Assembly: GCF_052425735.1 (NCBI RefSeq)
Contig: NC_135760.1
Coordinates: 16,988,001 to 17,052,000, forward strand
From: Oculina patagonica
Lineage: Eukaryota
Direction of reading: 5' to 3'
Length of the DNA: 64,000 nucleotides
Within the stretch, counting starts at the first letter, position 1, and every line of letters starts with the position of its first letter. This document shows, in pieces, positions 2,205 to 55,101 of this stretch. Position numbers and translations under genes: made by a program. Below the pieces are notes generated by a model. That model was given only the letters and a program-made list of their open reading frames with translations, did no database searches and was not told where the DNA came from.

Positions 2205-2247
<43 letters not shown>

Positions 2248-15332: not shown

Positions 15333-15477
15333 CATTCTCACTCATTTATGATGTCACTCATTGTTCGGCGTGGATAAGATATGGGAAAAGATTGTGGCCA
15401 AGGCATATATCATTCTCACTCATTAATTATGCCGCTAATTGTTCGGCGGGGATAAGATATGGGATAAGATTGTGGCC
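15333..15477. repeat. Two-unit ~78-bp tandem repeat
   Basis: cattctcactcatt...ttgttcggcg.ggataagatatggga.aagattgtggcc occurs twice. Confidence 0.7.
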
Positions 15478-20312: not shown

Positions 20313-20549
20313 TCCAATGTCTTACAAAGATCAACACGAGACCGATACACCCCATTCTTGGAAGTGAATTGGAAAATCAGATCCTTTTCATTTTACTGGC
20401 ATAAATCTCTGGTTCCCTCGCCGTTGTAGCTTTTAGTAGTGACGGTCTGTAATTATTATATGTTGTGTTTACCTGTAATGTGACCTTTACTTAACATGGA
20501 ATTTTAAATCAAACTATAGGCTGCCATTTGAATGATCAGTAATCTCACC

Positions 20550-27200: not shown

Positions 27201-30200
27201 GGTTGCTCTTGGGTCTTTCGAAGGTGTACGCGGTTGCGACGGTACACTCCACCATCTGCTGTTTCAACTGTGTACGAGCGCTGGTCACGTTTCTCGATTA
27301 CCAGTGCTTTGCGCCACTTTTTCTCGCCTAGGCGGAGTGGTTTCATGCGCACTGTGTCACCCTTGTCGAGGGGATGGAGATCTTTGGCTGTGCGGTTGAA
27401 ATAGTGCTTCTGTTGATTTTGGCGCTCGACAAGTTTTGCTCGCTCATCAGATGGTTCGCTGGCTTGCGGTTTCAGAAGTTTGCTTGTTGCTGGTAGTAGG
27501 GTCTTTGTTCTCCGGCTCATAAGGCGCTGGGCTGGGCTGGATCCCACTCCTTGTGTAGGTGTGTTGCGATAGTCTAAGATCGCCAAGTAGGGGTCAGTAC
27601 CAGCTTCACATGCTTTGCGAAGGAGTCGCTTTGCTGTTTTTACGGCGGACTCGGCCTTTCCATTCGCTTTGCTGTTTCCTGGACTGATGGTGTTATGTTC
27701 AAATTCCCAGGTCTGAGCGAACGTGGCAAATTCTTTGCTGGAGAACTGTGGCCCATTGTCGGATACAACTGTATCTGGACATCCATATCTGGCAAAGTGG
27801 TTCTTGAGTTTCAAGACGACGGTGCTTGCCTTAGTGTCAGGTAGCTTGTCCACTTCCCAGAAGTTGCTGTAGTAGTCGACTGTCACTAGGTAACTCTTGT
27901 TTTTGAATTCGAAAAGGTCTGTTCCCACCTTTTCCCAGGGTCGTGATGGTACTTCATGTGGTAGGAGGGTTTCTTTCTGTTGACTGTTCTCAAACGTCCT
28001 ACAGGTTTCACATGCTTCGACTAGTTGCTTAATCTCTGCAGACATTCCGGGCCAGAAGATGTAGTCTCTCGCTCGTCGCAGACACGATTCGATTCCCATG
28101 TGCGAGGAGTGAATCTTGTTTTTCATCTCTTTCCGTAGAGTGGCAGGGATCACTAGCCTTTCTCCTTTAAAGATCAATCCGTCTTGGACTGTTAGCTCAT
28201 CTCTTATGCTGTAATATGGAGTCGCTTGTAACGGTAGATCGCCCTTGTCATCTGGCCATCCCTTAAGGATTAGGGACTTTACCACCAGCAGTGCTTGGTC
28301 AGTGTCTGTTTCTTGCCTGATTTCTTGTATCTTCCGGTCACTGATGGGGAGGGCCTTGACCATGTTTACTAACTCAAATTCTTTGTCGTCTTCTCGTCCT
28401 ACTTCAGGGAGGTATGCTCGGGACAACATATCAGCTATGTACATCTTCGCCCCACATTCATAGTGTACACTGATGTTGTATTTTTGAAGTCTCATCATCA
28501 TGCCTTGAAGTCGGCGAGGTGCGGATGATAGAGGCTTCTTTAGGATAGATTCTAGTGGCTTGTGGTCGCTTCTCACTGTGACTGGTCGTCCGAAGGTGTA
28601 CTGATGAAACTTTTCGAGAGAGAACACAATCGCCAACATTTCTTTTTCAATTTGGGCGTATCTCTCCTCAGTATCAGTGAGTGCACGGCTTGCATAGGCG
28701 ATTGGCTTTCCCTTTTGAAGGAGTGCAGCTCCGAGACCCTTTTGACTTGCGTCGCATTGTATCTCGAGCTCTGATTTGGGGTCGTAGTAGCTTAGGATAG
28801 GAGCCGTGGTCACAAGCCTCTTGATTTCCTCGAACGACTTCTCCTGTTCCTCAGTCCACTGCCATTCCACATCTTTTCTTGTTAGTCGCCGCAGTGGTTC
28901 CGTTACATCTGCCAATCCAGGTAAAAACTTCGCAAGATAATTGATGAATCCGTTAAGTCTTTGTATGCCTTCAACGTCTTCAGGTTTCGGCATTTCTTGA
29001 ATAGCTTTCGCTTTCTCTGGATCCATCTTCACACCGTGACTCGTTAGTATGTGACCCATGAAAGACACTTCTTTTTGCTTGAGCTTTAACTTATCTCTGT
29101 TAAGGGCAATGTTGCGCTCACGACATCTTTTCAGTAAAGCTTGGAGGTTCCTGTTGTGATCTGCGACTGCTTCTTGTTCGCTGTTTCCAACACCATATAC
29201 TAGGATGTCATCTGCGATGTTAAGAACACCGCTCAAGCCTTCTAGTGCTTGGTTTACTCGCTTCTGGAAGATTTCAGATGAGACTGACAAACCGAAGGGC
29301 AATCGGCACCAGCGGTATCTTCCAAATGGTGTTGCGAATGTCGTGAGTAGGCTTGACTCTTGATCGAGAACACAGTGCCAATATCCTGAACGCAGGTCGA
29401 CAGTGGAGAAGATTTTGGCTTGAGATAATTCCGGCAGAATTTCATCCAGTACAGGTATCTGGTATGTTTCTCTTTTCAGCGCCTCGTTCAATGGCCGTGG
29501 ATCGATACACACTCTCAGCGCACCTGATTTCTTAGTAGCGACTGCCAGACTGCTCACCCAGGGTGTTGGCTCTTCCACAGGTGCAAGGATTCCTTGTGTG
29601 ACGTATCGATTTAGTTCTGCTCTCAAGTCATCTTTTAGTGCCGTAGGAACTCGTCTCGTCGGGGTGATGACAGGTTTAACGCTATCGTCAACTTCTAAGT
29701 GGACTTCACCCGGAAAGGTTCCCAACGGACGGTCAAATACGTCTGTGTATTGCTTTATTACTTCTTCGGCTGTTATCTGTTTAATTTGTAGCTCATTTTC
29801 CTTTGAAGGAGGTGAGGCTGCGATGAAATTTTCGTCATGAACGGTGATTAGCCCCATTTGTTGAGCCGCTCTTGCGCCGATCAAAGGTGTTAGATTGCTT
29901 TCGACAACGACGAATTCTACGGAGTACTTCTTCCTTGTTTTCGGGTTACGCATGATGAGCCTTGTCGTTCCTATGGGTTTCACTTGAGATCCATTCCACA
30001 TTCGCAGAGTTTTCGTGGTCGGCTGGATTTCGTGACTTGTTGCGTGCTTCGCCGGGATGATGTTGATTGATGCTCCACAGTTAATTTGAAAGTTGACCTT
30101 TCTGTCATCGATAAGCATCTCAGCGTAAATTTCTTTAGCGTGACGAACAGCATTGACGTCAGACTCTTGAGAATCCATAGCAACTCCAGCTAGAAGCTCG

Positions 30201-33200
30201 ATGTCGCTCTCTTCTGATGACACGTCTTCTGGCTGGTCGGAGATTCCATGGACTCCGCGAGATTTGGTTTTCTTGCAAACACTTTTGAAGTGGTTTCGGC
30301 CGCCACATCCGGAGCATTTCTGTCCCCAGGCTGGACATTTCTCCTTTTTTAGTGGGTGTTCACCTCCACAGAATAGACACTTCTTGTGAGATTTGCCAGG
30401 AGGTTTCGGTGGCACATTCCGATCATTCTTCGTATCGCGTGAGGGATATTTATCCTTCTTGAAGTTTCGTCTCCAATCTCTAATTTTATGCACGCTATCG
30501 TCCCCAGAAATAGCTTTTAACTGGGTCGCTGTGGCTTCATCACTTCTACAAATATCTATACATTTATTGAGGGTCAGACTTCGCACTTGCAGAAGCTTCT
30601 TTCTCATGGTATTGTTTCTTACACCTAGAACAATACGGTCTCTTATCAGAGTGTCACGCATGCACTCGCAGAAATTGCATGACTTCACTAGATTGCGAAG
30701 GGCAGTGACATAAGCATCAATGGACTCTTGTGCTTCTTGATTTCGACTATTGAATACGTATCGTTCATAAGTTTCATTAGTTTGGCCCAGTGTAAACTCG
30801 TCAAACTTTTCTAGAACCTTGTTCAAAATCTTCTTGTCGGTTTCATTTTCGAACTGGAAGCCATTGTAAATTTTTAGTCCTTCCGTCCCGACACAATGCA
30901 GAAAGAATGCGACCTTGTAGTCTTCTGTTTGCGAGTTTAGCCCAGAAATAAGAGAATAATTCTCCCATACCTGTTTGTAGGATTTCCAAGCGTCTGCCAG
31001 ATTTCCTGACGTGGTGAGTTTTCCAGGGGGTTTAAGGCCATGCGCTGGAGAGGACATAGTAGTGTGCGTGATGGGCGCTGTCCCGGTTCCAGCTGTTGCT
31101 GTAGTTGTTGTTGAGGTTGTAGCCGTTGAAGAAGTTGTTACCATTTTCAGAATGAACTTCTACCACGCGCTGCCACCATGTAACACGTTCCGTTTGGTCT
31201 ACTAGTAGGAGACACAGAGACGGCTCTTCAGGAGTCAATCTATCGTGCTTTAATCAAGTTTCTTGCTATCGTGATCTTACACGTTCAGTAAGCTATCGAG
31301 AGTGTAAAATGTGAAAGTAATGCCAATCATATTATAATCAAATGTCACGTGAATCATATCAATGCCAATAAACAATCTATTGTGTCCATATTGTAACAGC
31401 TTGTAATACCAATTCTAAATACAATCGGCTTTTTCCTTTTTTTTAAGCCAGTAATGGTATGCTTGAGGACAAGTATTAAGTCGCTCCGTGCGTACTTCTT
31501 CGGTGAACAAACAGCGAATTTGGAAGAGTGGGAATGCGAAGTAGTTTTTCAATTTAATATGGCGAAAATACATGACGCTGTCTCATTGATTAATTTATAT
31601 TTTGTCGCAGCGATTAATCGCAGACGTGTACACACGCTGCGACAACGCTGCTATTGCTCATTTCGTCGCTGCGATGTGTCGCACGAATTCGTGCAACTCA
31701 TCGCAGCAAAAAAATTCTGTCGCAGCGACTTGTTTGTCGCAAGAATGCACCATGTCACACGAGGCGACATGTCGCCGCGACGTGTCGCTTAGTGTGTGCC
31801 GACCTTTAGTGAGCCAGTTGATGATCGCCTGTGTATAGATAGCTGCTTGCTCAGAATATTTGATAACAAAAGTGCATCAGTGGTCTAGTTAACCTGTTAA
31901 ACTGTGTAATAAAAAAAAACATAGCAATGAAAAATGAACATCATGCAACATAAACATGTGTGTAGAAGTTTTTTACTAAGTTAAAGCACACTTATTTTAC
32001 TTGTCATTATAGGAGCGAGTGCCTGTTTAAAGCTGAATCGTTTTGAAGAGGCCATCAAATGGTGTGAAAAGGGATTAGCCGTATCCTTTACAAGCAAATT
32101 TTGTTTCTCTTTCTATTTGCAAGCTCAATTTTCATCGCCGTTGGTTGCAACCCTTAAATTCGCTGTTGGTTAGCCATGGCCAAATGAATAGGTAAAAGAG
32201 TGCTAATTGGTAGTCTTTCCTTTCGTGCAAGACTTGTTCCTTCACGGTAGTAAAACAAATTAAAATAAAATTAAAAAATGGATTAAGCAGCCAACTGCAA
32301 ACCAGGCATTCTGAAGGAACTAAATCTGCCAGTTTTGCCGCTTTGTTGTCGAAGATTTAAGAATGGACTACAGCAGCCAACTGCAAACCAGGCTTTCTAA
32401 AGGAACTAAATCTGACAGTTTTGCCGCTTTGTTGTCGAAGATTAAAGAATGGACTACAGCGGCCAACTGCAAACCAGGCTTTCTAAAGGAACTAAATCTG
32501 CCAGTTTTGCCACTTTGTGGTCGAAGATTTATAGACTTCTTTGTTTACTTGCGCAAATTACATTAAGGTGGAATTTCTGAACTCGAAAAAGATTGACGAG
32601 AATAACAAGAAGCTGTTGGAGTTAAGGATCAGGTCTGTTAAAGACCAAAGCAAGCAGCAGAAACCAGAAAGAGACAGCATAGAAAAGAAGTTAGAAGGTC
32701 ACACTGTAAAAGGCAAGGTAAGGTTGTTGGAAAGTGCTGGTTTTTCGTAGTTTTAGTTTTCCATACGTTTCTAACGGTAAGGGTGAGTTAAGGTGTCTCG
32801 ATAATATTTTTTTTTTCTAGACCAATTTTCAATTGGCCTTTCAAAAGCCTTCCCTGACTCAAATTTATATTAAAATTACACCAGATAAGGGTTTTAGATT
32901 AAAATTTGATTTCACGTGTTATTAAGGTAATCGATATTTCCATGGCATCGATAAACAAAAAAACAGCCAAATCAGTAAAACCTGATTTTGCGTGAATCAG
33001 ATTTCCCATTAAAAACTATTACCAGCATCTTAAAGTATGATGTACTGCAAAAAAAATTATTAAAGAATAAAATATTCTGTATGTTTGATTTCGAATAACT
33101 CACAAAAAATGTTTCAAATTGTCCTTTTTACATAATGATAATAAGAGGACCAAGACACAAACACGATGCAGAAGAAGTAATCTCAAATAACGTCAAAATG

Positions 33201-36200: not shown

Positions 36201-39200
36201 TTTACAATGTCCAGCATACATGTCAAATGCATCATACTTGAAGGAAATGTTCCTGACAGTACAAATTGCTTAAGGACTTGACATTTCAAGGCGACACAAC
36301 TTGGTGATTGGTCGGGTAAGAGCAGTTCTCGTCACTTTGATTTCTCTTTCTCGTCGACGCTTTGCACGAGTCACAACAGTGCAACTTGTTAGCACCTTTG
36401 CAGAACGCACATATCCATCTTCACTCTCAAACACTTCCACAACTCGGGCTAATGGCCACTGACCTCTTGGGTAATTCTCATCTGCCAGAAGAACGAGTTC
36501 ACCAACCTTAAGGTTCTCTCTCGGTTCATTCCACTTCTTTCGTTCTTGGAGGGTAGGAAGATATTCCTTAATCCACCGTTTCCAGAATACACTTGCTAAG
36601 TACTGCGCTTGTCTCCACTGTCGTCTACAATGCAAATCCTCCTTCTCAAAGATTCCAGGGGGCAAACTGGCACATGGTCGCAGCTGCAACAGATGATTTG
36701 GTGTAAGGGGTTCTTCATCCATTGGGTCATCACTATTTCGTGTTAACGGCCTACTGTTTAGAATGTTAGTTGCTTCTGTTAGAACAGTCGACAACACTTC
36801 ATCGCATACCACCTGTTCTTTCAAAAGAGCCTTCAGGATTTGGCGTACAGACCTTATCATTCTCTCCCATGATCCCCCCATGTGACTTGCTGCAGGAGGG
36901 TTAAAGATCCATTCGATACCTCTTTGCGCACAAAACCCACTGATTGTTTGCTGATTCCACTCGTTAACAGCATCCTTAAGCTCCTTATCTGCTTTGGTAA
37001 AATTTGTGCCACAGTCACTGCGAATCTCTTTCGGGTATCCTCGGAGGTTAATGAATCTCCTCAGTGCATTGATCATGGAATCTGTATTCAGGCTATGTGC
37101 AACTTCCAAGTGTATAGCACGGACAGTTAAGCATGTGAATAGGCAACCCCAACGTTTAACTCGACTTCTTCCTTGCTTCACCTCTATAGGCCCAAAATAG
37201 TCCACACCAACATATGTGAAGGGAGGTTCATGTGGAGTAATTCTGTCTTCGGGCAACTTGGCCATAAACTGCTCTCCAGTGGGCGCTTTCCTTCTCTGGC
37301 AATCAAGACACTTCTTTAACACACGACGCACTGCAGAACGTCCCTTTACAACCCAGAACCTTTCCCTCAGGGACGTCAGAACGGATTCTTGACCGAGGTG
37401 GCCAACCTTAATGTGATGATACTGGATAATCAGTTCTGTGACATGGTGGTGACTGGGAAGGATAAATGGATGCTTCAAATCTTCATCTATTGGAGCACAC
37501 TCCAGTCTTCCACCAACTGACAACAACCCATTTCTCAACTTCGGATTCAACTTGAAAATCGAGGATCCCTCTTTCTTTATGACCCTCTTGATCTGTCGTT
37601 CACTTGAACCAGACGACATGTTGACGAGTGCCTTATACACATTTGGGAATGCCGACTTCTGCACCCGTCGAATTACTTCTTCTTCAGCCTTCTGAAGCTC
37701 AACGACTGTTAGGTTTCCAATTCTTACTTCTGGTTTGCCAGAAGGACAGCCATCATTAAGGGTAGCATCTTTCTTCTTACAAACTTTGCTTCGTATAAAC
37801 TGCTTGTAGCGTAACAGCCAAGCGAATGCTCTCTTCAGTTTCCACCAGGAAGAGTAGTGATGTATCAAGCTGTCAAATGGATCTTGTGCTACACTAGTAG
37901 CATAAATTCGACTTTCCTTTCTTACTTCAGCATCACTGTCCTTTAGCTCAGGTACTTCAATCACTGAAGGCCAGCAGTTTTCTTCTTTCCAGAGGAATGC
38001 AGGGCCATTCAACCACCGACTATTCCTTGTCATGTCATCAAGCCTTAACCCTTTTGATGCATCATCTGCTGGATTGTCGTCTCGGTTGACATATCTCCAG
38101 TCTGAAACGGATGATCCACTGCGAATGGCCGTGAGGCGATTTGACTCGAAGGTGTGGAACCGTTTAGAGTCATTGTTAAGGCATTTCAGCACTGTAGTAG
38201 AGTCAGTCCAATAATTCACTCGATCCACTTCAATTTCCAACTCTTCTCTGATTATTCCACTTAACTTAACAGAAATAACCGCGGCAGTTAACTCTAATCT
38301 CGGTATCGTTATTTCGTGAATGGGAGCCAATCGGGCTTTCCCCATAACAAAGCTGCAATGGATTTGGTCAAAGACATCAACAAGGCGTAAATAGGCTACT
38401 GCTCCGTACCCCACACGCGATCCATCTGAGAAAATGTGCAGCTGAACATTCTTGATTTCGCCAAAATGCTTTGGTTTGAAGCATCGGTCAACTTGGACTT
38501 CTTCCAACTTCAAAAGATCCTCCAGCCAATGAGACCACTGAACTTTGTCTTGTTCTTCTATCTCAGTATCCCAGCTCAACTTCCTCCGGCAGAGGTCTTG
38601 TAGTAAAAGTTTTCCTTTCATAACATAAGGGGCAATGAATCCTAACGGGTCAAACAACGAACTCACAAGTGAAAGGATACCACGTCTCGTCATTGGCTTT
38701 ACCTTGGCCAGAGTCTGAACTTTGGTTGACACATCCCAGACAAACTTGTCAGCTTCTATATTCCACTTCAATCCAAGGGCACATGCAGTTGGCAAGTCTT
38801 CTATGTCTAGGTTAACTACAGAACTTGCTCTCTCACACTCAGGAATCTCAACCAGTACATCTCTGTCATTGCTAAGCCACTTGGTTAACCTAAACCCTCC
38901 TTTCTTCAGTAGCTCTCGTAACTGTGTTGACAACTTTATTGCGGTTTCAGGAGAAGAAACAGATTTCATCAGGTCGTCAACGTACATGTTTCTCATCACA
39001 GTCTGAATTGTTTCAGGGTCAAACTCTTCCAGGCATGTCGACGCTGTCTTCTGTAGGCAGAAGTTGGCACCAAACAGGTGTTTCACCATGCGGTATTCTT
39101 CTGGTTCTTTCTCCAGGTCCCCATCAGGCCACCAAAGAAACCTCAACACATTGTTATCTTCGGGGTCAACATAGACTTGGTGGAACATAGCTTCTATATC

Positions 39201-42200
39201 GGCTGCAATAGCTATTGGCTCTTGCCGAAATCTAATCAACACTCCAACAAGCGGATTTGTCAAATCAGGGCCTTGCAATAATTGCTGATTCAAGGAGGTT
39301 CCACGATATTTCGCACCACAGTCAAATACAACTCTAACCTTCCCTGGCTTCAACGGGTGTGTCACAGGGTGATGTGGCAGGAACCAGACTGGTTTCTCTT
39401 TCAAATTCAGCTCTTCTGTTGGAACTTTCTGGGCATGACCTTTCATTATGTACTCTTGCATTGTGGTACGGTACTTCAGGAGTAGATCTTCATCCTTAAG
39501 GAGTCGCTTCTTTAGAAGTTGTAACCTCTGTTCCGCCACAGGTCTATTGTTTGGTAGTTCTGGGCATCCTTGTCGCCATGGCAATGCAACTTGGAAATGC
39601 TCTCCAACTCTTTGTAGGGATTCCTCCATTTTGTTCAAGGCTAACTTGTCTTCAACTGATGGTGAGACTGTTGTCCCAATCACAGAGTCTCCAAAATCTG
39701 TCTTCCAAAGCCGTTCAAGTTGCTGGTGCAGGGTATCATTGTCAATGTCACAGTCAATTAATTCTTCCTTTTCTTCCTTTAACGGAGGGAGATTTACAAC
39801 AGATCGCTGCTCTAGCCTCTCGATGGGTTCCCTGTGCTCAAAATTGCGAACACTCTCTGACCACATTGCAGTTTCGAATTTCACCCCAGTTTTGTCAATT
39901 GCCTTAGTCGAAGGATTCTCATGCAAACAACATCCGCCCAAATCCATGTCATCCGCAGATGTAACTCGGACAAAGTTCACCGAACAATGTTCATCTTCTT
40001 TGCGTTCACCCATCGGACCTATCACTGTCCACCCCAGGCTGTAACGGATAGCTATTGGCTCGTCGATTGCACCAGCTTTAAACTCTAATGGGAGGAAGAG
40101 ACTAGGCTTTTCTTTAAGACCAATCAACAACAAAACTTCTCTATTTCCAACTTCGGGAATGTCAATGCCTCGTAGGTGAGGCCAGCAAGCAAGATCTTCT
40201 TTCTTTGGAATACAACTTGGAGAGATAGGCATCTGTGCGACTGTCTTTACACTCGGTAACTCCACCACAACTGACTCATCCATAGACATTACAGTCAAGT
40301 CTACCACACGACTCTCCATCTGAGTTGAACCAGTCATTCCAGTCAGCGTAAAGTTAAGCCTTTCTCCTTCCAGCTCAAGTTTGTTAGCTAATCGTTCATG
40401 ACACAATGTCACCTCTGATCCATTATCAAGAAGGGCATATGTCTGAATAATCTCGTTGCCCTTCCCTCGAACCTTAACAGGGATAATTCCCAGACACACT
40501 CTTGTTTCTCCAGCCCCAGTAGCTGCCACAGCAATTCCATTTCCATCACCGGCCCCAGTAACGTCACCTGACCTAGCAGTCCCTTGACTTGGTTGCAAAT
40601 GTTGCTCTGCAATAGCAGCGGTTGCAAAGTTACTGTTTTGACTAGCAGTGTTTCTGTTCATACTGTTAAGGTCTCTTCGAATTCCAGCAGCGGGGCGATG
40701 CATCAGGGTATGGTGACTACCTCCACAACCAGGCCTTTGACACTTGAAATTTACTTTCGGGCACTCCTTGGCAATATGTCCCTTAACTAGACACTTATTA
40801 CACAGTCCACCACTTTGCACAATTTTCCACTTCTCTTCATAGGTGAGGCCTTTGAATTTACCACACTTCCAAACGTCATGCTGCTTTGTGCAAACTTGAC
40901 AAGGCGCGGGGGCATCCACAAATTTCGATCCTCTAGCATTCTCGTTTTGACCATCGCGAGTTGGTCCAGTTCCAGTGGCAAATGCTGACAGGCTTGGGAA
41001 GTTTCCACTTTGATTCATTTTGTTTCTTTTAGGAGGTGTCTCCTTCAAAGTTCCAGTAACCATATCTCGGCCAAACTCGTTGTCCACCAATTTAGCTCTT
41101 TCCTTGACAAATGCTACAAAGTCTTGAAACTTAGGTCTGCGGTCGGCTGCAATAATCCTCCCAGCACACTCGGTCCATCTCCCTCTTAGAAACATTGGCA
41201 ACTTCTTTGCGAGCTCTCGCAAAGTGTTCATGTGATTAAGATCAGACACAAATTCAGCACCTATGCCGCTCAAAGTTCGATCTGCGGTGTCCAAATGTCT
41301 GCTGAGCTCCAACAACGAAGGTCCATCCACACTCTTCATACAAGGCAGATTCAACAACTTCTTAACATGAGCCTCCGCAATCACATGCGGTTTTCCAAAG
41401 TTCTCCCGTAAGGTTTGTTTTGCTACTCGGTAACCATCGTTACGCAGATTTGAACAACTTTCGATAGCTTCCTTTGCCTTTCCTGTGCAGTGTTGTATGA
41501 GAAGTTGTAATCTCCTGGACTCATCCGGATTATCCCTTTCCAAATAGGTTTCAAAATTGTGCATAAAGGTGACGTACTTCAATGGATCACCATCAAACCG
41601 ATGATACTCAACCTTAGGTGAGGAAACTACCTGTCTCAAAGCCTTTACCATCTCTTAACCACTATCGAACTGCTCATTTGCTGGTTCTACTTTCACGACT
41701 GGCGGCACATAGGGTCGAGGCATCTGCCAAGAAGAGGACCAAGTTTCACTAACACGTTGTCCAACTGATGTCTGCCTGGGTTCAATTTTTGGCAAGGAAC
41801 TCCTACTTGTCACAAGGTTGGGAGGTGTACACTGTGGGTTTCGTATAATGGGTGCCGGCGCGGTCGACACATTTCCAGCCAAAGTAGTCAACGCCGGAAT
41901 AGAATCAGTTGGCTCCACAGATCCAGGACAAATTAAATCAACCTGTTCAGTCCTACGGGGTAAGGCTGCTCTCTGATTCGACAGGGTTGAAGTAACTATG
42001 GTTGTATTGTCTAAATGATCATTCACACTGACCTTTGAGCTATCTGGAATTTTACTCCTTTGTGAAGGCTCTAAATAACCCAGGAAGGATTTCTCGCGTG
42101 ATTGTTCCATGCTTTCCTCTTCATAAATCTGAAGAGAGACTGCCGCCCTTTCAGTCTCCATTTCTGCTTCTATTAGCTCCTTCTTCCTTCGAATTGCTTG

Positions 42201-45200
42201 CATTTCCTGTTCAAACTGCTGTCTAATCCCTAACTGTCGTAGATTCAATTGCGCCAGGGCCAATTTCTCCCTTTTTCTAGACACTGTAGACAATCTTGAA
42301 CTCGACGTGGAAACCCCACTTCGTCTGCTCCTTTGCGTTCCGCGAGAAAACTCACTATAGTTATCTCCTCGTTCGGGTTCTCTGTCCTTGTACCATAATC
42401 GTACGGTGAAGTCGAGATTGAGCTTTCGTTGTAGCTGTTCATCGTATGTCTTCTGTGTCTGTTCCAAAACAAGGGTGTCCATAAAAGGATCCAATAATTT
42501 CAGATAACTTTCGTGAGCGTCCACGAATTTACGCCAAGATTCATCAAATCTCGCATATTCCTTCGACACATCTTCACGACTTGCATCGCTTTCGGTAAGG
42601 TGAACAATTTCATTATAAACCTTCGTCAAATTTCCAATATGGGCGGCGCGTGATTTTTGAAGAGCGAGTTTCTTTTCGTTTAAGACGCCTTCCCTGTCTT
42701 GCATAACACTAGCTTGTCTATCCCTTGTGCTTCTCCTTTCTTCCATTCCATTTTGGTCGCTCGTACCATTAGCTGCGGTGTCGAAGAATCCATTCGCTTC
42801 CAGTGGCGATTCAGGTTGTTCGTCTGACATATTCCGTAAACACAACAAATCGTTTCGCCGTTCGCATTCCACACAATCCACCAAATTTCCAATTCCAATA
42901 ATTTCCAAGGCGAAGTAGTCGAAAACTGTTACACAGCCCAAGTGCTATGTAGTGATTCAAAGTCAAATTTAACGTCAAAAACTCAGAACTTTTAATACAT
43001 GATACGATCCAGGTTTCAAGATTACACTCTAACAATCCAGGTTCAGTTCAGGCATACCAACTATAGTTCAGGTTCTCTACAAATACAAATATGAACTAGT
43101 AAACATAGGAAACGAATCGAAGTACATGTAGGTACATTTTGCAAATAATATGACTCTTACCGACTGTTTCGTTAGGTCCAAAATGTTCAACAAGGTAAAG
43201 AAATAAAAACAACATGGCGAATCCAAGCGAGAACAACGCACATGGTTGGTCACGTGATGCAAATTCGTGACGTAATATAGGTCCGCACAACATGCACGCA
43301 ATGGTAGCTACAATAGACACTTTTGGCTTTGCCAGTGTAAATTGTCCATTTCAAATCATATGATGTCCCCAGTGAACTTGCTTTAAACTATCTGAACACC
43401 GAGAGAATTTGTTTGAATTTGAAAGAAGTGATTCTCAAGAGTCACATAGTCTGAAATGGGACAACCAAACGAAGCCCCAAAGGTCTATTCTCAGTTCTTT
43501 GTCTGTAATTTTTAACATACTGACTTGCTTTACGGGAAAGTCCTCGCCTTAGTATGCATTGCATACCAATTATTGTTTATCGTTCTCATGGAAATATCGA
43601 TTGCCTGAGTCTGGGAGGACTGCTGAACGACCATTTGAAAATGTTAGGGATAGTCCAGGAAAAACTGCATCGAGACACCTTAATTGGTGCAATTTTTAGA
43701 ATATGGCTAATTAAAGGTCAAATGAACCGAAATTTCAAAATGCCATTTTACCAACCAAACACTAAAACTAACCATTTTTTTGTAAAATAAATTATTATTT
43801 AGTAAAATAGCTTTCCGAGCCTTAAAGCGCGAATTACAGCAAAAAAAATATTCGAAAGCTTCACAACGTTTCTTGAATTACCGCGCACTGAAATGGAAGG
43901 GATGGAACGAGTTTGTGATGTCATAATTGGTGTTTTTGAAGACGACCGCAGACCGATTCCACTTATGTTCAGGATTGAACGCAAGTATCGTTAAATAAGT
44001 ACTCACGTTTGACTGTGTTATTTGACATCTCAATATTACTTCATATTTGACAGATTTTAGTGTGTTTTGGTGAACTTTTATTAATGAGGACACTTTGTGA
44101 TGCCTGCCGTTAGGAACGTGCATCTCATTAGCGTTTAATCCTGGACATATCTGATCGATTCCGCAGAGCGCACTGGTTGCCAAAGTTCGAGACAAAAGAG
44201 CGATTTCACAAACCTCGATTCTTACATGCTAATGAGAATCGTTAAATGCCAATGAGAAAGCACAATAGAGATTCCTGATTTGTTTTCATACCAGCGTGCA
44301 TACTACCTACGTCTCACGGGATACGCAAATCGACAGCAAACAAAACTTGAACTTTCTTGTGCTATTTTGGAGCTGTCTTGAAGCAAATATAATAAATGTG
44401 ATTTCCAACATCTGTTAATCTACCAGGTTAATGCATCACAATAAGAAAAGAGTAAACAGGAAAAGCGAAGCAGACCTTTAATATAAATAAATAGAAAGGT
44501 TGTCAATTGTTTTGACTGTTTATTTATCGGGGATTTGTACAAGTTCAATTTGCGTCCAGCAGTCGACGGCTTACAGTTAGAGTGTTCGTCAAATCACTGA
44601 AAAACAGTGATGAACAATTCTAGTATAAGTTCCTGAAGGTACAGCAAAACGAAACAAAACAGAACTGAGACACTTATCTCTAATTCAGAATAAATCAACG
44701 ACGGACGTAACAATAGTTCGTATAACTATACGAAACTATGCGAAACTAGACTGTGCGAAACACTAAACTACAATTTTTGAAATATGAAAAATAAATCAGT
44801 GTCGAGGCGTGGCCCTTTAGGCTGCACGGGGGCACACCACATTACCTAAGTTAAGTTCTCGCAGTTTTCTTTGTTAACAAATATTTCTTTCTTTCAGATC
44901 GGTGATTTGAAAAGTCCCAATACCAAAAGATTGGTTGACAAAGCGGAAGAAGCACTTTTGTGTGGCAATCTTGGAAAGGCTTTTCTAAGTTTCGGTGATT
45001 TCAGAAAAGCCATAGACTACTACGAATTGGATCTTAAAATCGCCAAAGAAGTAGGAGACAAGGCCGGCGAAGGAAGTGCCTATGGCAATCTTGGAAATGC
45101 TTTTCTAAGTCTCGGTGATTTCAGAAAAGCCATAGACTACTACGAATTGCATCTTAAAATCGCCAAAGAAGTAGGAGACAAGGCCGGCGAAGGACGTACC

Positions 45201-48200
45201 TATGGTAATCTTGGAATTGCTTTTAGTAATCTCGGTGATTTCAGAAAAGCCATAGACTACTACGAATTGGATCTTAAAATCGCCAAAGAAGTAGGAGACA
45301 AGGCCGGCGAAGGACGTACCTATGGTAATCTTGGAATTGCTTTTAGTAATCTCGGTGATTTCAGAAAAGCCATAGACTACTACGAATTGCATCTTAAAAT
45401 CGCCAAACAAGTAGGAGACAAGGCTGGCGAAGGCAATACCTATGGCAATCTTGGAAATGCTCTTCTAAGTCTCGGTGATTTCATAAAAGCCATAGACTAC
45501 TACGAATTGAATCTTAAAATCGCCAAAGAAGTAGGAGACAAGGCCGGCGAAGGACGTGTCTATGGCAATCTTGGAAATGCTTTTAGTAATCTCGGTGATT
45601 TCAGAAAAGCCATAGACTACTACGAATTGCATCTTAAAATCGCCAAAGAAGTAGGAGACAAGGCCGGCGAAGGACGTGCCTATGGTAATCTTGGAAATGC
45701 TTTTCTAAGTCTCGGTGATTTCAGAAAAGCCATAGACTACTACGAATTGGATCTTAAAATCGCCAAACAAGTAGGAGACAAGGCTGGCGAAGGACGTGTC
45801 TATGGCAATCTTGGAAATGCTCTTCTAAGTCTCGGTGATTTCAGAAAAGCCATAGACTACTACGAATTGCATCTTAAAATCGCCAAAGAAGTAGGAGACA
45901 AGGCCGGCGAAGGAGGTGTCTATGGCAATCTTGGAATTGCTTTTCGTAATCTCGGTGATTTCAGAAAAGCCATAGACTACTACGAATTGGATCTTAAAAT
46001 CGCCAAAGAAGTAGGAGACAAGGCCGGCGAAGGACGTGCCTATGGTAATCTTGGAAATGCTTTTAGTAATCTCAGTGATTTCAGAAAAGCCATAGACTAC
46101 TACGAATTGGATCTTAAAATCGCCAAACAAGTAGGAGACAAGGCTGGCGAAGGCAAAACCTATGGCAATCTTGGAAATGCTCTTCTAAGTCTCGGTGATT
46201 TCAGAAAAGCCATAGACTACTACGAATTGCATCTTAAAATCGCCAAAGAAGTAGGAGACAAGGCCGGCGAAGGAGGTGTCTATGGCAATCTTGGAAATGC
46301 TTTTAGTAATCTCGGTGATTTCAGAAAAGCCATAGACTACTACGAATTGCATCTTAAAATCGCCAAAGAAGTAGGAGACAAGGCCGGCGAAGGACGTGCC
46401 TATGGTAATCTTGGAAATGCTTTTCTAAGTCTCGGTGATTTCAGAAAAGCCATAGACTACTACGAATTGCGTCTTAAAATTGCCAAACAAGTAGGAGACA
46501 AGGCTGGCGAAGGCAATACCTATGGCAATCTTGGAAATGCTCTTCTAAGTCTCGGTGATTTCAGAAAAGCCATAGACTACTACGAATTGCATCTTAAAAT
46601 CGCCAAACAAGTAGGAGACAAGGCTGGCGAAGGCAATACCTATGGCAATCTTGGAAATGCTCTTCTAAGTCTCGGTGATTTCAGAAAAGCCATAGACTAC
46701 TACGAATTGCATCTTAAAATCGCCAAAGAAGTAGGAGACAAGGCCGGCGAAGCAAAGGCTTATGGCAATCTTGGAATTGCTTTTAGTAATTTCGGTGATT
46801 TCAGAAAAGCCATAGACTACTACGAATTGCATCTTAAAATCGCCAAAGAAGTAGGAGACAAGGCCGGTGAAGGAAGTGCCTATGGTAATCTAGGTTTCAG
46901 CTTCGAATCACAAGGTTTCTTATCCAAAGCCTTAGAATATTACGACCGTAGCGTAAGATTATTCAACCATGTGAGAAGCCTTCTTCAAAGTAATGATGAG
47001 TGGAAAATTGGCTATAGAAATGAAGTTGACTATGCATACACTGGTTTATGGAGAGTACTGCTAAAGCAAGGCAATATGGTTGAAGCTTTGCTTGCTGCTG
47101 AGAAAGGACGAGCCCAAGGTCTTACTGATCTTATGTTATTCCAATTTGGCATTAGAGAAAGCCAGTCCGTGTCACAGGAAGAAGACGAAGAGCAATATCT
47201 TCAACTGAAACGCTCTATTCCATCAAGTACAGTTTTTCAGGCATTTGACAGTGCTAAGATTCATCTCTGGGTTCTTTCAAAAGAAGGACCTGTTCGTGTA
47301 AGAGCGAAAGAAATTGGCGAGACCCATTCTGTATTAAATGATGCCACCGCCTTTTTTCAGTCGTTGATAAAAAATGCATTTAGAAAAATTCGCTTTTGCG
47401 CTGAGGTAAGATGCGAAAATCGTTCTTTGGATGCATTAAGAGAAAATCGTCACAAAGCGGATGACAATTCCGACAGGGAAAACTCTCAACCCTTCGACCT
47501 ACAAGAGATTTCTTTGAGCACCTTGTACAATATCTTGTTTCAGCCGATTGCCGATCTGGTTCAAGGTGATGAGCTAATCATTGTCCCACATGGACCACTG
47601 TGGCTAGCTCCTTATGCTGCATTGATGGATGCGGATTCTAAATACCTGTGTGAGTTGTTTAGAATCCGGTTGATTCCTTCGTTGACAAGCTTGAAGCTGA
47701 TTGCCGACTGCCCAGAGGACTACCATAGTAGGAGTGGTGCATTACTTGTGGGCGATCCATGGGTAGAAGAAGTTACCAACAGCAAGGGTGAAAAATTTCT
47801 GGATTCTCTTCCGTTCGCAAGAAAGGAGGTAGAAATGATCGGAAAGATTCTCAACGTGGCGCCTCTGATTGGAAAGAAAGCAACGAAACGCGAAGTGTTA
47901 AAAGGACTCAGTTCAGTTGCTTTAGTTCATATTGCAGCACATGGTCGCATGGAAACTGGTGAAATTGCTCTAACACCGGACTCACAGCAAGCATCTCGAA
48001 TCCCAACGAAGGAAGAAGATTACATTTTGAACATGTCAGATGTTCTGAGTGTTAAAGTGCAAGCGAGACTGGTTGTCCTTAGTTGCTGTCACAGCGGTCG
48101 AGGAGAGATCAAGGCTGAAGGTGTGGTCGGTATTGCACGTGCCTTTATGGGTGCTGGTGCTCGTTCTGTTCTGGTGTCACTATGGGCAATTGATGACGAA

Positions 48201-48383
48201 GCTACGCTGGAGTTTATGAGGAGTTTCTACCATCACCTTGTGGAAGGAAGTAGTGCAAGTGAGTCTCTGAACCTGGCCATGAAACATCTCAGAGAATCAG
48301 ACAAGTACAGTGATGTAAAATACTGGGCCCCTTTTGTACTTATTGGAGATGACGTCACTCTAGACTTTCATCGGAAGAAATGA
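20550..48383 (+). CDS. Copy B, complete spliced gene: 2x TTC4/Cns1-like TPR module + 16x40-aa TPR array + CHAT protease (~1507 aa; automated pipelines would probably call it 'TTC28-like')
   Basis: Phase-compatible exons: join(20550-20640,21076-21237,21856-21933,23188-23255,24161-24253,24723-24834,25372-25533,26480-26557,32013-32080,32592-32717,44898-48383) = 4524 nt, open throughout. ATG is in accATGG context with an in-frame TGA upstream (alternative ATG at 20532). All introns are GT..AG. Confidence 0.85.
20722..20978. mobile_element. Diverged copy of the ~285-bp short-TIR repeat (see 58726-59010)
   Basis: gagcaattttcacttgagtgtcgaaagtaatttgcgtttgctttgg is the reverse complement of the 58960-59010 end. 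Confidence 0.65.
23256..24160 (+). other. U12-type intron, copy B module 1
   Basis: 5' splice site GTATCCTTGAC; branch GTCTTAAC (24144-24151) followed by ccaaagaAG; joins GLA|IDK. Confidence 0.85.
24723..32717 (+). CDS. Copy B exons 6-10: TTC4/Cns1-like three-TPR module 2 (internal duplicate of module 1)
   Basis: Same core exon sizes (162, 78, 68 nt) and phases as module 1. Translation [20 protein letters not shown]...[23 protein letters not shown]...[57 protein letters not shown]. Confidence 0.8.
26691..31398 (-). mobile_element. Full-length Ty3/Gypsy LTR retrotransposon (Mag-like), in an intron of copy B
   Basis: Identical 220-bp TG..CA LTRs at 26691-26910 and 31179-31398. 5-bp TSD GCTTG (26686-26690 / 31399-31403). 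PBS TGGTGGCAGCG (tRNA-Leu-like 3' end) and PPT next to 26910. The empty site is at 808-812 in copy A. Confidence 0.97.
27017..31144 (-). CDS. Gypsy gag-pol polyprotein (1375 aa): Gag zinc knuckles, protease (D->N), RT, RNase H, integrase
   Basis: [17 protein letters not shown] knuckles; FQINCGAS; LPFGL..IADDIL; CDASQKGLG; HHCC plus [13 protein letters not shown] and KAESAVK. Domain order is PR-RT-RH-IN. Confidence 0.95.
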   Translation of the reverse strand: MVTTSSTATTSTTTTATAGTGTAPITHTTMSSPAHGLKPPGKLTTSGNLADAWKSYKQVWENYSLISGLNSQTEDYKVAFFLHCVGTEGLKIYNGFQFENETDKKILNKVLEKFDEFTLGQTNETYERYVFNSRNQEAQESIDAYVTALRNLVKSCNFCECMRDTLIRDRIVLGVRNNTMRKKLLQVRSLTLNKCIDICRSDEATATQLKAISGDDSVHKIRDWRRNFKKDKYPSRDTKNDRNVPPKPPGKSHKKCLFCGGEHPLKKEKCPAWGQKCSGCGGRNHFKSVCKKTKSRGVHGISDQPEDVSSEESDIELLAGVAMDSQESDVNAVRHAKEIYAEMLIDDRKVNFQINCGASINIIPAKHATSHEIQPTTKTLRMWNGSQVKPIGTTRLIMRNPKTRKKYSVEFVVVESNLTPLIGARAAQQMGLITVHDENFIAASPPSKENELQIKQITAEEVIKQYTDVFDRPLGTFPGEVHLEVDDSVKPVITPTRRVPTALKDDLRAELNRYVTQGILAPVEEPTPWVSSLAVATKKSGALRVCIDPRPLNEALKRETYQIPVLDEILPELSQAKIFSTVDLRSGYWHCVLDQESSLLTTFATPFGRYRWCRLPFGLSVSSEIFQKRVNQALEGLSGVLNIADDILVYGVGNSEQEAVADHNRNLQALLKRCRERNIALNRDKLKLKQKEVSFMGHILTSHGVKMDPEKAKAIQEMPKPEDVEGIQRLNGFINYLAKFLPGLADVTEPLRRLTRKDVEWQWTEEQEKSFEEIKRLVTTAPILSYYDPKSELEIQCDASQKGLGAALLQKGKPIAYASRALTDTEERYAQIEKEMLAIVFSLEKFHQYTFGRPVTVRSDHKPLESILKKPLSSAPRRLQGMMMRLQKYNISVHYECGAKMYIADMLSRAYLPEVGREDDKEFELVNMVKALPISDRKIQEIRQETDTDQALLVVKSLILKGWPDDKGDLPLQATPYYSIRDELTVQDGLIFKGERLVIPATLRKEMKNKIHSSHMGIESCLRRARDYIFWPGMSAEIKQLVEACETCRTFENSQQKETLLPHEVPSRPWEKVGTDLFEFKNKSYLVTVDYYSNFWEVDKLPDTKASTVVLKLKNHFARYGCPDTVVSDNGPQFSSKEFATFAQTWEFEHNTISPGNSKANGKAESAVKTAKRLLRKACEAGTDPYLAILDYRNTPTQGVGSSPAQRLMSRRTKTLLPATSKLLKPQASEPSDERAKLVERQNQQKHYFNRTAKDLHPLDKGDTVRMKPLRLGEKKWRKALVIEKRDQRSYTVETADGGVYRRNRVHLRKTQEQPPMIQQHNEPFPLGNPAPSKPAETLPATNPPPEPAETPSPMSLRPARVRRPPERFKDYVCY
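31481..31805. mobile_element. Copy-B-specific MITE-like insertion
   Basis: Absent at copy A ~905; rich in tgtcgc/gcgaca palindromic motifs; ends gtgtgtgccgacct. Confidence 0.5.
32081..32591 (+). other. U12-type intron, copy B module 2
   Basis: 5' splice site GTATCCTTTAC; TTTCTGAAC followed by tcgaaaaAG; joins GLA|IDE. Confidence 0.8.
32277..32530. repeat. Triplicated ~85-bp unit inside the U12 intron
   Basis: aatggac..cagc.gccaactgcaaaccaggc...ttgtcgaagatt occurs three times; copy A has a single unit (~1395-1468). Confidence 0.85.
35600..43312 (-). mobile_element. Full-length BEL/Pao LTR retrotransposon, in an intron of copy B
   Basis: Identical 386-bp LTRs at 35600-35985 and 42927-43312. 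6-bp TSD ATAGAC (35594-35599 / 43313-43318). PPT aggggccgg on the minus strand. Empty sites at ~4447 and ~53292. Confidence 0.97.
36270..42830 (-). pseudogene. BEL/Pao gag-pol, interrupted by an in-frame TAA (41655-41657) and an apparent 7-codon RT deletion
   Basis: ORFs 41655-42941 and 36270-41651 share a frame (GGT TAA GAG ATG). Motifs: triple Cys knuckle, ALLDNGS protease, NMYVDD RT, Pao RNase H (FSDGS..IPRLEL), integrase GVDYFGP/SDCGTNF/WERMIR. The start coordinate is approximate. Confidence 0.85.
44898..48383 (+). CDS. Copy B terminal coding exon: TPR array + CHAT (caspase HetF-associated with TPRs) peptidase domain
   Basis: Acceptor tttctttcag at 44897. The ORF has 16 GNLG...[11 protein letters not shown] units, then the CHAT motifs [24 protein letters not shown] (His 47940-47942), [10 protein letters not shown] (Cys 48087-48089), SLWAIDD and [10 protein letters not shown]. 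Confidence 0.95.
44964..46883 (+). repeat. Coding tandem repeat, 16 x 120 bp (40-aa TPR)
   Basis: Exact 120-nt periodicity is visible line by line. Confidence 0.95.
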
Positions 48384-54923: not shown

Positions 54924-55101
54924 NNNNNNNNNNNNNNNNNNNNNNNNNNNNNNNNNNNNNNNNNNNNNNNNNNNNNNNNNNNNNNNNNNNNNNNNNNNNN
55001 NNNNNNNNNNNNNNNNNNNNNNNNNNNNNNNNNNNNNNNNNNNNNNNNNNNNNNNNNNNNNNNNNNNNNNNNNNNNNNNNNNNNNNNNNNNNNNNNNNNN
55101 N
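54924..55101. other. Assembly gap (N run)
   Basis: 178 N. Confidence 1.

What the first reader, a model, noticed from the sequence alone, without database searches (positions are those of the whole stretch)
44964..46883. TPR array with a repeat-variable 'code' at ligand-groove positions
Seen: the units are almost identical at DNA level, yet substitutions cluster at a few codons. In TPR numbering (Y4-G5-N6-L7-G8) these are position 2/3 (SA, RT, NT, RV, RA, GV, KT, KA), 9 (N/I/K), 11 (F/L), 12/13 (LS, SN, RN), 27 (H/D/N/R) and a linker E/Q. Synonymous differences are few. Copy A uses a different order and repertoire (SA/KA/GA; LS/SN/CN/RN). Established: positions 2, 9, 12 and 13 line the concave binding groove of TPRs, and an invariant N6 forms an Asn ladder in LGN/OGT-type TPRs. 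High-identity repeats with focused variable sites are typical of fungal NLR (HET-E-type) sensors and TALEs. Inference: diversifying selection plus unit shuffling generates recognition specificities.
Basis: partly seen in the sequence, partly recalled or inferred. Interest (0 to 1): 0.8.

Follow-up and report, generated by a model that had tools for sequence, protein, structure and literature searches.

The report
Coral TPR-CHAT gene, near-identical repeats
A stony-coral gene for a caspase-like protease carries 16 almost identical 40-residue repeats that differ mainly at the positions its closest solved relative uses to grip partner proteins; this fits a variable sensor, but no partner or function has been tested.

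Summary
Window 44952..46871 holds 16 in-phase 120-bp units plus a degenerate cap. They lie in the last exon (44898..48383) of Oculina patagonica LOC144646972, a member of the published coral TPR-CHAT (TTC28-like) expansion. A second copy (14 units, 6457..8138) carries two +1 frameshifts and is probably a pseudogene.

Units are 92.7% (B) and 96.1% (A) identical in DNA. Variation is concentrated at codons 2, 3, 9, 11, 12, 13, 27 and 33.

Synonymous variation is not negligible. piS among units (0.087) equals dS between paralogues (0.085), and overall omega is about 0.6.

At codons 2, 12, 13 and 27, non-degenerate sites are 3.3-4.8 times as heterozygous as four-fold sites (p 0.005 to 0.0005). M2a beats M1a, with omega 4-5 at sites 2, 12 and 27. 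Recombination among units weakens the tree-based test, and an allele-count test was not significant.

The same four positions are the most variable in Pocillopora and Orbicella arrays.

In LGN/GPSM2, the closest solved relative (TM 0.83-0.86), published ligand contacts fall on unit positions 2, 5, 6, 9, 12 and 27.

Population polymorphism, ligand and function remain untested.

The scan noted this family three times before on other DNA of this genome.

The parts
44952..46871 (+). Copy B array: 16 in-phase 120-bp (40-codon) LGN-type TPR units. The first has an N-cap start (ALLC).
   Evidence: Mean pairwise identity is 92.7% in DNA and 87.3% in protein.
46872..46991 (+). Degenerate capping repeat of copy B
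   Evidence: starts as a normal unit (GSAYGNLG), then diverges.
44898..48383 (+). Last exon of gene B (LOC144646972): pre-array linker, TPR array, linker, CHAT domain, stop codon
   Evidence: Open frame. 100% identical to P0001. Acceptor AG at 44896-44897. A contig of run X6 is spliced from 32717 onto this exon.
47511..48350 (+). CHAT (caspase-like) protease domain of gene B. His motif VHIAAHG at 47925..47945, Cys motif LSCCHSG at 48078..48098.
   Evidence: Pfam PF12770, E 3.5e-57, full profile 3-289/289. Motif coordinates.
20532..32717 (+). Upstream exons 1-10 of gene B, encoding two Hop/STI1-like 3-TPR modules. tblastn matches (not exact exon ends): about 20532-20642, 21075-21239, 21855-21968, 23187-23261, 24161-24271, 24708-24839, 25371-25535, 26476-26559, 32012-32125, 32592-32717.
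   Evidence: tblastn of P0001 residues 1-360. Donor GT at 32718. PDB homologues Hop, SGTA, RPAP3, PP5.
6457..8138 (+). Copy A array: 14 units, 96.1% identical in DNA. Units 4 and 5 are 121 bp.
6850..6859 (+). First +1 frameshift in copy A. AGTAAGTCTC is an out-of-register hybrid of the SN-type (AGTAATCTC) and LS-type (CTAAGTCTC) codons 12-14.
6971..6980 (+). Second +1 frameshift in copy A (TGTAAGTCTC), at the same site one unit later
8139..9650 (+). Capping repeat, linker and CHAT domain of copy A. The frame is open here and the His and Cys motifs are intact (9192..9212, 9345..9365).
   Evidence: dN/dS against paralogues is 0.27-0.42.
27017..31144 (-). Ty3/Gypsy-type retrotransposon pol ORF (1375 aa) inside an intron of gene B
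   Evidence: Pfam RVT_1, RNase H, integrase
36270..42941 (-). BEL/Pao-type retrotransposon ORFs (1793 and 428 aa) inside the last intron of gene B
   Evidence: Pfam Peptidase_A17, DUF1759, DUF5641, integrase

Best explanation
Gene and architecture. The array is the ligand-binding arm of an apparently expressed, cytosolic multi-domain protein of the coral TPR-CHAT family. The protein has two Hop-like TPR modules, then 16 LGN-type 40-residue TPRs, then a CHAT caspase-like protease with its His and Cys motifs intact.

Structure (shown). The repeats are predicted to form an LGN-like superhelix whose inner groove is lined by helix A.

Binding model (inferred). In every unit the invariant G5 and N6 supply a constant ladder that binds the ligand backbone. 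Positions 2, 9, 12, 13 and 27 read the ligand's side chains and differ from unit to unit.

How the arrays evolve. They change by multi-unit duplication or deletion and by exchange between units and between paralogues. This keeps the scaffold near-identical, while diversity at the contact positions is kept above the neutral level.

Function (inferred, untested). Ligand binding in the groove controls the CHAT protease. These genes would then be a diversifying family of sensor-proteases for immunity or non-self recognition, analogous to fungal NLR and TPR-CHAT sensors.
For: Gene identity and architecture.

Transcription: a contig of run X6 carries 28 letters that match the end of exon 10 exactly and run straight on into the last exon, so it is spliced 32717 to 44898. 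X6 is labelled RNA only as a guess.

LGN-like fold: phmmer against the PDB gives E 1e-70. The AF2 model has pLDDT 83 and matches LGN complexes at TM 0.83-0.86, rmsd 2.4-3.0 A, 34-39% identity.

Contact mapping: LGN N203, R221, R236, K106, Y139, N100, R136 and D81 fall on unit positions 9, 27, 2, 12, 5, 6, 2 and 27. Numbering was checked on all eight residues in the alignment. The contacts come from PMC10115442 and PMC9187228. Canonical TPR groove positions are from PMC1261162.

Excess diversity: heterozygosity at 0-fold sites of codons 2, 12, 13 and 27 is 0.35-0.42, against 0.09-0.11 at 4-fold sites. This holds in three sets, with p 0.005, 0.004 and 0.0005. The codon set was chosen beforehand from other coral genera. 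The M2a versus M1a likelihood-ratio statistic is 18.3, 59.4 and 131.7.

The same positions are the most variable in Pocillopora and Orbicella arrays.

Shuffling: unit number is 14-26 among intact paralogues. Identity peaks at lags of 3, 5 or 6 units. Hot sites are in linkage equilibrium, with 61 seven-site haplotypes in 102 units. Gene B is a mosaic of two paralogues.

Family context: at least 92 CHAT matches in this genome. Tandem, copy-number-variable expansions in corals are published (PMC12314368).
Against: Over the whole unit omega is 0.5-0.8.

Synonymous diversity among units (0.087-0.099) equals dS between paralogues (0.085). The near-identity could therefore simply date from one recent burst of amplification.

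The tree-free allele-count test gives ratios of only 1.5-3 for codons 2, 12 and 27 in the larger sets (7-8 for codon 2 in the window set). Nothing survives correction for 40 codons.

The M2a test assumes a tree, and recombination among units clearly violates that.

The LS/SN alternative at codons 12-13 is a multi-nucleotide difference counted as several changes.

Positions 3 and 11 are packing positions.

No ligand, protease substrate, population sample or model coordinates were available.

Copy A is broken.
Confidence: 0.6

Rival explanations
1. Relaxed constraint plus recent amplification. The units and the seven genes arose in one recent burst. Positions 2, 12, 13 and 27 are simply the least constrained surface positions of this TPR type, so they diverge first. 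No selection for diversity is involved.
For: piS among units is about equal to dS between paralogues. Within-gene unit identity is about equal to between-gene identity. The allele-count test is not significant. The same positions are also the most variable in old, diverged arrays, as expected for unconstrained sites. Pseudogenes are common.
Against: Diversity at these sites is 3.3-4.8 times that of four-fold synonymous sites in three sets. Neutral sites should not exceed the synonymous level. Non-synonymous alleles sit at intermediate frequency and in nearly all combinations. The sites coincide with LGN ligand contacts rather than with any exposed surface. The charged convex face (18, 22, 25, 29, 32) is nearly invariant.
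Confidence: 0.25
2. Housekeeping or scaffold role like canonical TTC28. The array is a structural or assembly platform, for example in the cell cycle or chaperone-linked. The variable residues tune superhelix geometry or self-association rather than reading diverse ligands.
For: Human TTC28/TPRBK has the same architecture and a reported role in mitosis (cited in PMC12314368 and PMC9145168). Positions 3, 11 and 24 are core positions that also vary. The N-terminal modules look like Hsp70/Hsp90 co-chaperone TPRs.
Against: Hundreds of tandem, copy-number-variable paralogues with pseudogenes are atypical for housekeeping genes (PMC12314368). The strongest variable positions are ligand-contact positions in LGN.
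Confidence: 0.1
3. Assembly artefact: the array's unit order and number are a mis-assembly or collapse of a long repeat.
For: Short-read contigs cannot span the array. No long reads were examined.
Against: Perfect 120-bp phase and an open 1162-codon frame. The array lies on a 30-Mb contig and matches the NCBI gene model exactly. Nearly all units are unique in DNA, 24 of 26, which gives an assembler anchors. Five sister genes show the same organisation.
Confidence: 0.03

Closest known systems
Coral TPR-CHAT domain-containing proteins (TTC28-like expansion; PMC12314368, PMC9145168)
   Same: Same family: TPR_12/TPR_7 repeats followed by one CHAT domain. Tandem clusters in transposon-rich regions and variable TPR length. 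Best hits are O. patagonica, Orbicella, Pocillopora and Stylophora 'TTC28-like' proteins.
   Different: In the passages I read, those papers describe gene number and TPR length. They do not describe near-identity of units or fixed hypervariable positions.
LGN/GPSM2/Pins TPR domain (PDB 3sf4, 6hc2, 3ro2, 7ep7)
   Same: 40-residue TPR period with the xNLGN motif. 34-39% identity and TM 0.83-0.86. LGN ligand contacts fall on unit positions 2, 5, 6, 9, 12 and 27 (PMC10115442, PMC9187228).
   Different: LGN has 8 diverged, deeply conserved repeats, GoLoco motifs and no CHAT domain. The coral arrays have 14-26 near-identical units.
Fungal NLR repeats with high internal conservation (HET-E/HET-D WD40; TPR and ANK NLRs; PMC4986451, PMC12222747)
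   Same: At least 85% internal identity. Variable repeat number. Hypervariable, positively selected sites on the concave binding face. Recombination among repeats and loci.
   Different: There is no NACHT or NB-ARC domain here. Units are 40 rather than 42 residues. The effector is a C-terminal CHAT protease. Allelic repeat-number polymorphism is not shown here. The lineage is an animal.
TPR-bearing CHAT proteases of fungi and bacteria (gasdermin-activating proteases; Csx29/Craspase)
   Same: A TPR sensor arm fused to a CHAT caspase-like protease (PMC12881547). Csx29 is from my own knowledge.
   Different: No gasdermin or CRISPR partner lies in this window. Regulation and substrate are unknown.
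PRDM9 zinc-finger arrays and TALE repeats (analogy only, from own knowledge)
   Same: Minisatellite-like coding arrays of near-identical units that vary at a few contact residues.
   Different: Those read DNA with a known code. Here the ligand is presumably a peptide and no code is known.

Membership tests
TPR-CHAT DCP / TTC28-like | Multiple TPRs (PF13424/PF13176) N-terminal to a single CHAT domain (PF12770) | tested here: met
   TPR_12 E 1.4e-145, CHAT E 3.5e-57, full-length profile match.
TPR-CHAT DCP / TTC28-like | Catalytic His and Cys of the caspase-like fold present | tested here: met
   Motifs VHIAAHG and LSCCHSG are found in both copies. They were identified by motif only. They were not aligned residue by residue to a solved CHAT structure.
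TPR-CHAT DCP / TTC28-like | Sequence homology to coral proteins annotated TTC28-like | tested here: met
   more than 4000 hits. Named hits come from Oculina, Orbicella, Pocillopora and Stylophora.
LGN-type TPR fold | 40-residue period, two 18-residue helices, superhelix like LGN | tested here: met
   helix A spans positions 37-14 and helix B spans 17-34. TM 0.83-0.86 to LGN chains.
LGN/GPSM2 orthologue | C-terminal GoLoco motifs and eight diverged TPRs | tested here: not met
   The C-terminus is a CHAT domain and the array has 16 near-identical units.
Repeat sensors with high internal conservation (fungal NLR regime) | At least 85% internal identity over at least 100 residues | tested here: met
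   mean amino-acid identity is 87.3% in B and 94.0% in A, over 640 and 560 residues.
Repeat sensors with high internal conservation (fungal NLR regime) | Codons under positive or diversifying selection | tested here: inconclusive
   For: M2a against M1a, p 1e-4 to 3e-29, and the heterozygosity test, p 0.005 to 0.0005. Against: the allele-count test is not significant, and recombination violates the tree model.
Repeat sensors with high internal conservation (fungal NLR regime) | Variable sites on the binding surface | tested here: met
   Positions 2, 9, 12 and 27 correspond to LGN ligand contacts, and 2, 9, 12 and 13 to canonical groove positions (PMC10115442, PMC9187228, PMC1261162). Positions 3 and 11 are exceptions.
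Repeat sensors with high internal conservation (fungal NLR regime) | Repeat-number polymorphism among alleles | not testable with these tools
   Only short contigs were available, and one search found no match more than 96% identical to gene B. Paralogues range from 14 to 26 units, but that is only a proxy.
NLR / STAND | Central NACHT or NB-ARC NTPase domain | tested here: not met
   Pfam finds no NOD domain in the last-exon product or in residues 1-350 of P0001.
TALE-like recognition code | One repeat reads one unit of the target through defined variable residues | not testable with these tools
   No ligand is known.

The most novel reading that the evidence does not exclude
Coral TPR-CHAT arrays are a germline-encoded, combinatorial peptide-reading system. 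Each 40-residue unit would use a constant G5/N6 backbone ladder plus variable residues 2, 9, 12, 13 and 27 to read a short stretch of an extended ligand. Unit shuffling would create hyperpolymorphic specificities that switch on a caspase-like protease. That would be an animal counterpart of fungal repeat-based NLR recognition, used for pathogen, symbiont or allorecognition.
Probability: 0.2. Interest if true: 0.8.

Novelty: new member of a known kind. Interest (0 to 1): 0.5.

Why it matters
Corals lack adaptive immunity, yet they must tell apart pathogens, symbionts and neighbouring colonies. The TPR-CHAT family is among their largest lineage-specific expansions, and its function is unknown. 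These arrays are kept near-identical except at the residues that LGN-type TPRs use to hold ligands, and the same positions vary in several coral genera. That gives a concrete, testable hypothesis: the arrays are variable sensor arms. It also names the residues to mutate. It extends to animals an evolutionary regime so far documented mainly in fungal NLRs.

Tried and rejected
(1) Allele-count (codon-state) test. It needs no tree, but it saturates in the large sets and is not significant after correction. I kept it as evidence against.

(2) Read laying on four runs. All are short Logan contigs of 80-180 nt with heavy multi-mapping. Unit-number or order polymorphism and somatic variation could not be assessed. 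Only a spliced contig was useful.

(3) The idea that the GTAAGT created by copy A's insertions is a splice donor. Joining it to the in-unit TTTCAG acceptor leaves only a 20-nt intron, too short to splice. Joining it to the next unit's acceptor gives an out-of-frame product with stops. Rejected by reading the sequence.

(4) The primary LGN structure papers (PMC3158460, PMC3248549) are not held. I took the contact residues from two later open papers instead.

(5) Model coordinates cannot be exported. Solvent exposure of positions 2, 9, 12, 13 and 27 was therefore inferred by homology and helical periodicity, not measured.

(6) No alternative haplotig of gene B is in the assembly. The best non-self match is 96%.

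(7) Two literature searches found no description of near-identical repeat units in coral or other animal TPR-CHAT genes. Absence from this library is not proof.

(8) A search with an over-long term and a find with a disallowed sign failed on syntax.
Full report
WHAT IS THERE

The window comes from the stony coral Oculina patagonica (G000:C3:16988001-17052000).

Tandem Repeats Finder reports two 120-bp arrays. One lies at 44963..46891 (16.1 copies, 92% matches) and one at 6468..8132 (13.9 copies, 96%).

Copy B sits in an open frame of 1162 codons, 44898..48383. This frame is the last exon of LOC144646972. Protein P0001 (1507 aa) is 100% identical to it.

Pfam finds TPR_12, TPR_7 and TPR_1 repeats, followed by a full-length CHAT domain (PF12770, E 3.5e-57). 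The His (VHIAAHG) and Cys (LSCCHSG) motifs are present.

Ten upstream exons (20532..32717) encode two Hop/STI1-like 3-TPR modules. Two LTR retrotransposons lie in introns.

A contig of run X6 carries 28 letters that match the end of exon 10 exactly and then continue into the last exon. This shows splicing from 32717 to 44898, so this gene or a near-identical paralogue appears to be transcribed. X6 is labelled RNA only as a guess.

THE OBSERVATION

In register, copy B has 16 units at exact 120-bp spacing plus a degenerate cap. Copy A has 14 units.

Mean pairwise unit identity is 92.7% in DNA and 87.3% in protein for B. It is 96.1% and 94.0% for A.

Y4, N6, L7 and G8 never vary and G5 changes only synonymously.

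Codons 2, 3, 9, 11, 12, 13, 27 and 33 hold 19 of the 27 non-synonymous codon-state changes.

Each has one extra base at codons 12-14. The inserted forms are out-of-register hybrids of the LS-type and SN-type codons, and they break the frame twice. No protein identical to copy A appears among the database hits. Copy A is therefore probably a young pseudogene. Its CHAT part is still open, with dN/dS of 0.27-0.42.

IS IT SELECTION?

Taken over the whole unit, it is not:
- There are 12 synonymous and 27 non-synonymous state changes over 25.5 S and 94.5 N sites, a ratio of about 0.6.
- piS is 0.087 and piN is 0.058.
- piS among units equals the mean dS (0.085) between the seven local paralogues in the non-repeat C-terminal region, where dN/dS is 0.41. 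The units are therefore no younger than the genes.
- Within-gene unit identity barely exceeds between-gene identity.

At particular codons the picture differs. I fetched five sister genes from the same cluster (C3 16.79-17.04 Mb) and twelve from a second cluster (C3 20.2-20.8 Mb). This gave 111 and 184 units. The same codons are hot in all three sets.

Tree-based test. I wrote a Goldman-Yang M1a/M2a implementation and ran it on FastTree trees.
- The likelihood-ratio statistics are 18.3, 59.4 and 131.7, with p from 1e-4 to 3e-29.
- About 10% of sites fall in a class with omega 4-5. Codons 2, 12 and 27 are in it, plus codon 3 in the window set.
- This test assumes a single tree, and that assumption fails here. 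Hot sites only 3-75 bp apart are in linkage equilibrium and show all four gametes. There are 61 seven-site haplotypes in 102 units.

Tree-free tests. I therefore added two tests that need no tree.
- Counting distinct alleles per site is conservative and saturates. Ratios for codons 2, 12 and 27 are 1.5-3 in the larger sets and reach 7-8 for codon 2 in the window set. Nothing survives correction.
- Comparing heterozygosity is more telling. For codons 2, 12, 13 and 27 I compared non-degenerate columns with four-fold synonymous columns. I chose this codon set beforehand from other coral genera. The values are 0.35-0.42 against 0.09-0.11, with one-sided Mann-Whitney p of 0.005, 0.004 and 0.0005. 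All other non-degenerate columns lie below the synonymous level.

Diversity above the synonymous level is what selection for diversity predicts, and it is not what relaxed constraint predicts. Two caveats remain. The LS/SN alternative is one multi-nucleotide polymorphism, so its columns are not independent. The three sets also share ancestry.

INDEPENDENT REPLICATION

I extracted units from proteins of other corals.
- Pocillopora verrucosa arrays are homogenised on a different consensus. Their top-entropy positions are 12, 2 and 27, and 13 is fifth after position 21.
- A second Pocillopora pair gives 2, 13, 12, 27.
- An unnamed coral gives 13, 2, 27, 3.
- Old, diverged Orbicella-type arrays (47% unit identity) give 2, 13, 12, 27.

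WHERE THE SITES SIT

Closest solved relative. This is the LGN/GPSM2/Pins TPR domain (phmmer E 1e-70).

Model. An AlphaFold model of the array has pLDDT 83. It shows 18-residue helices: helix A spans unit positions 37-14 and helix B spans 17-34. It superposes on LGN complexes at TM 0.83-0.86 and rmsd 2.4-3.0 A.

Geometry. Helix A faces the inner groove in LGN (PMC6525239).

Canonical TPRs. Positions 2, 5, 9, 12, 13, 33 and 34 are the hypervariable concave-face positions. Hop uses 2, 5, 6, 9, 12 and 13 to bind its ligand (PMC1261162).

LGN contacts. I used the ungapped alignment and checked the numbering on eight residues. The LGN residues that bind NuMA are N203, R221 and R236 (PMC10115442). 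They fall on unit positions 9, 27 and 2. The Gpsm2-Whirlin contacts (PMC9187228) map as follows:
- R221 on position 27
- R236 on position 2
- K106 on position 12
- Y139 on position 5
- N100 on position 6, bonded to the ligand main chain
- R136 on position 2
- D81 on position 27

Position 27 corresponds to the buried A27 of canonical TPRs, yet in this TPR subtype it is a ligand-contact position.

Exceptions. By helical periodicity, positions 3 and 11 lie on the hydrophobic packing arc (A3, L7, A10, F11, L14). They are not groove residues. Position 33 lies at the outer end of helix B.

I could not export model coordinates, so exposure is inferred and not measured.

HOW THE ARRAYS CHANGE

- Unit number ranges from 14 to 26 among intact paralogues.
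- Unit identity peaks at lags of 3 and 6 units in B, 3 in L035 and 5 in L033. In A, units 9-11 repeat as units 12-14, synonymous markers included. Arrays therefore grow by multi-unit duplication.
- Gene B is a mosaic. Its 5' flank and proximal C-terminal part match paralogue L032 (97.8% and 97.3%). Its distal CHAT part matches L031 (99.0%).
- B and L032 share that flank, yet their arrays differ in length (16 against 22 units) and in hot-site content after the third unit.

CONTEXT

This genome has at least 92 scored CHAT matches out of 467 candidates.

The coral TPR-CHAT expansion is published. It comprises 276-362 genes in tandem, in non-syntenic regions rich in transposons, with variable TPR length (PMC12314368; also PMC9145168). 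In the passages I read, neither paper mentions unit-level near-identity or fixed hypervariable positions.

Fungal NLRs are known to have highly conserved TPR, ANK and WD repeats, with positively selected concave-face sites and repeat-number polymorphism (PMC4986451). Fungal and bacterial CHAT proteases fused to TPRs act as sensors that activate gasdermins (PMC12881547).

Earlier notes of this scan (s1-271010, s1-268514, s1-291707) describe the same family elsewhere in this genome and reach a similar reading.

VERDICT

It even extends to position 27.

Selection for diversity at codons 2, 12, 13 and 27 is supported by two of three tests and by replication across genera. It is not proven, because recombination is pervasive and no allelic data exist.

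'Code', ligand specificity, population or somatic variation and immune function remain hypotheses.

This is a new member (an animal TPR-CHAT gene without a NOD domain) of a known kind (repeat sensors with high internal conservation), within a published gene-family expansion.

Noticed in passing
window 6850..6859 and 6971..6980; also loci L043 and L044: Copy A's two +1 insertions sit at the same place in adjacent units. They look like out-of-register joins between the LS-type and SN-type versions of codons 12-14. The frames of paralogues L043 and L044 start with the same out-of-frame signature (MAILE.LF). In L043 this runs straight into VSLGDF. This junction may therefore be a recurrent frameshift hotspot that produces pseudogenes.
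   Followed up: partly
P0001 residues 204-314 (window exons at about 25371..32125): The second N-terminal 3-TPR module aligns with Hop TPR1. It keeps all five residues of the two-carboxylate clamp as I recall them: Hop K8, N12, N43, K73 and R77 correspond to K208, N212, N247, K277 and R281. This suggests binding of the Hsp70/Hsp90 EEVD tails. The first module resembles Hop TPR2B.
   Followed up: partly
window 27017..31144 (-) and 36270..42941 (-): Two LTR retrotransposons lie inside introns of gene B: a Ty3/Gypsy type and a BEL/Pao type. Both have long uninterrupted pol-type frames (1375 aa; 1793 and 428 aa). The last intron is 12.2 kb as a result.
   Followed up: no
window 44552..44951 and 46872..48371 compared with L031 and L032: Gene B is a mosaic of two paralogues. 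Its 5' flank and proximal C-terminal region are 97-98% identical to L032. Its distal CHAT region is 99% identical to L031. This indicates recombination or gene conversion between loci.
   Followed up: partly
window 32270..32529 and 15328..15477: An 86-bp tandem repeat (3 copies) lies in the intron between exons 9 and 10 of gene B. A 78-bp repeat (1.9 copies) lies in intergenic DNA.
   Followed up: no
window 2191..2263 and 54924..55101: There is a 73-base run of T upstream of copy A's last exon, and a 178-base run of N (a gap or mask, left untouched).
   Followed up: no
run X6, loose end at window 45449: A second spliced contig joins the exon-10 end (..KGKVGDLKS) to mid-array sequence. This matches the shortened array start of paralogue L031 (P0002), so that paralogue appears to be transcribed too.
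   Followed up: no
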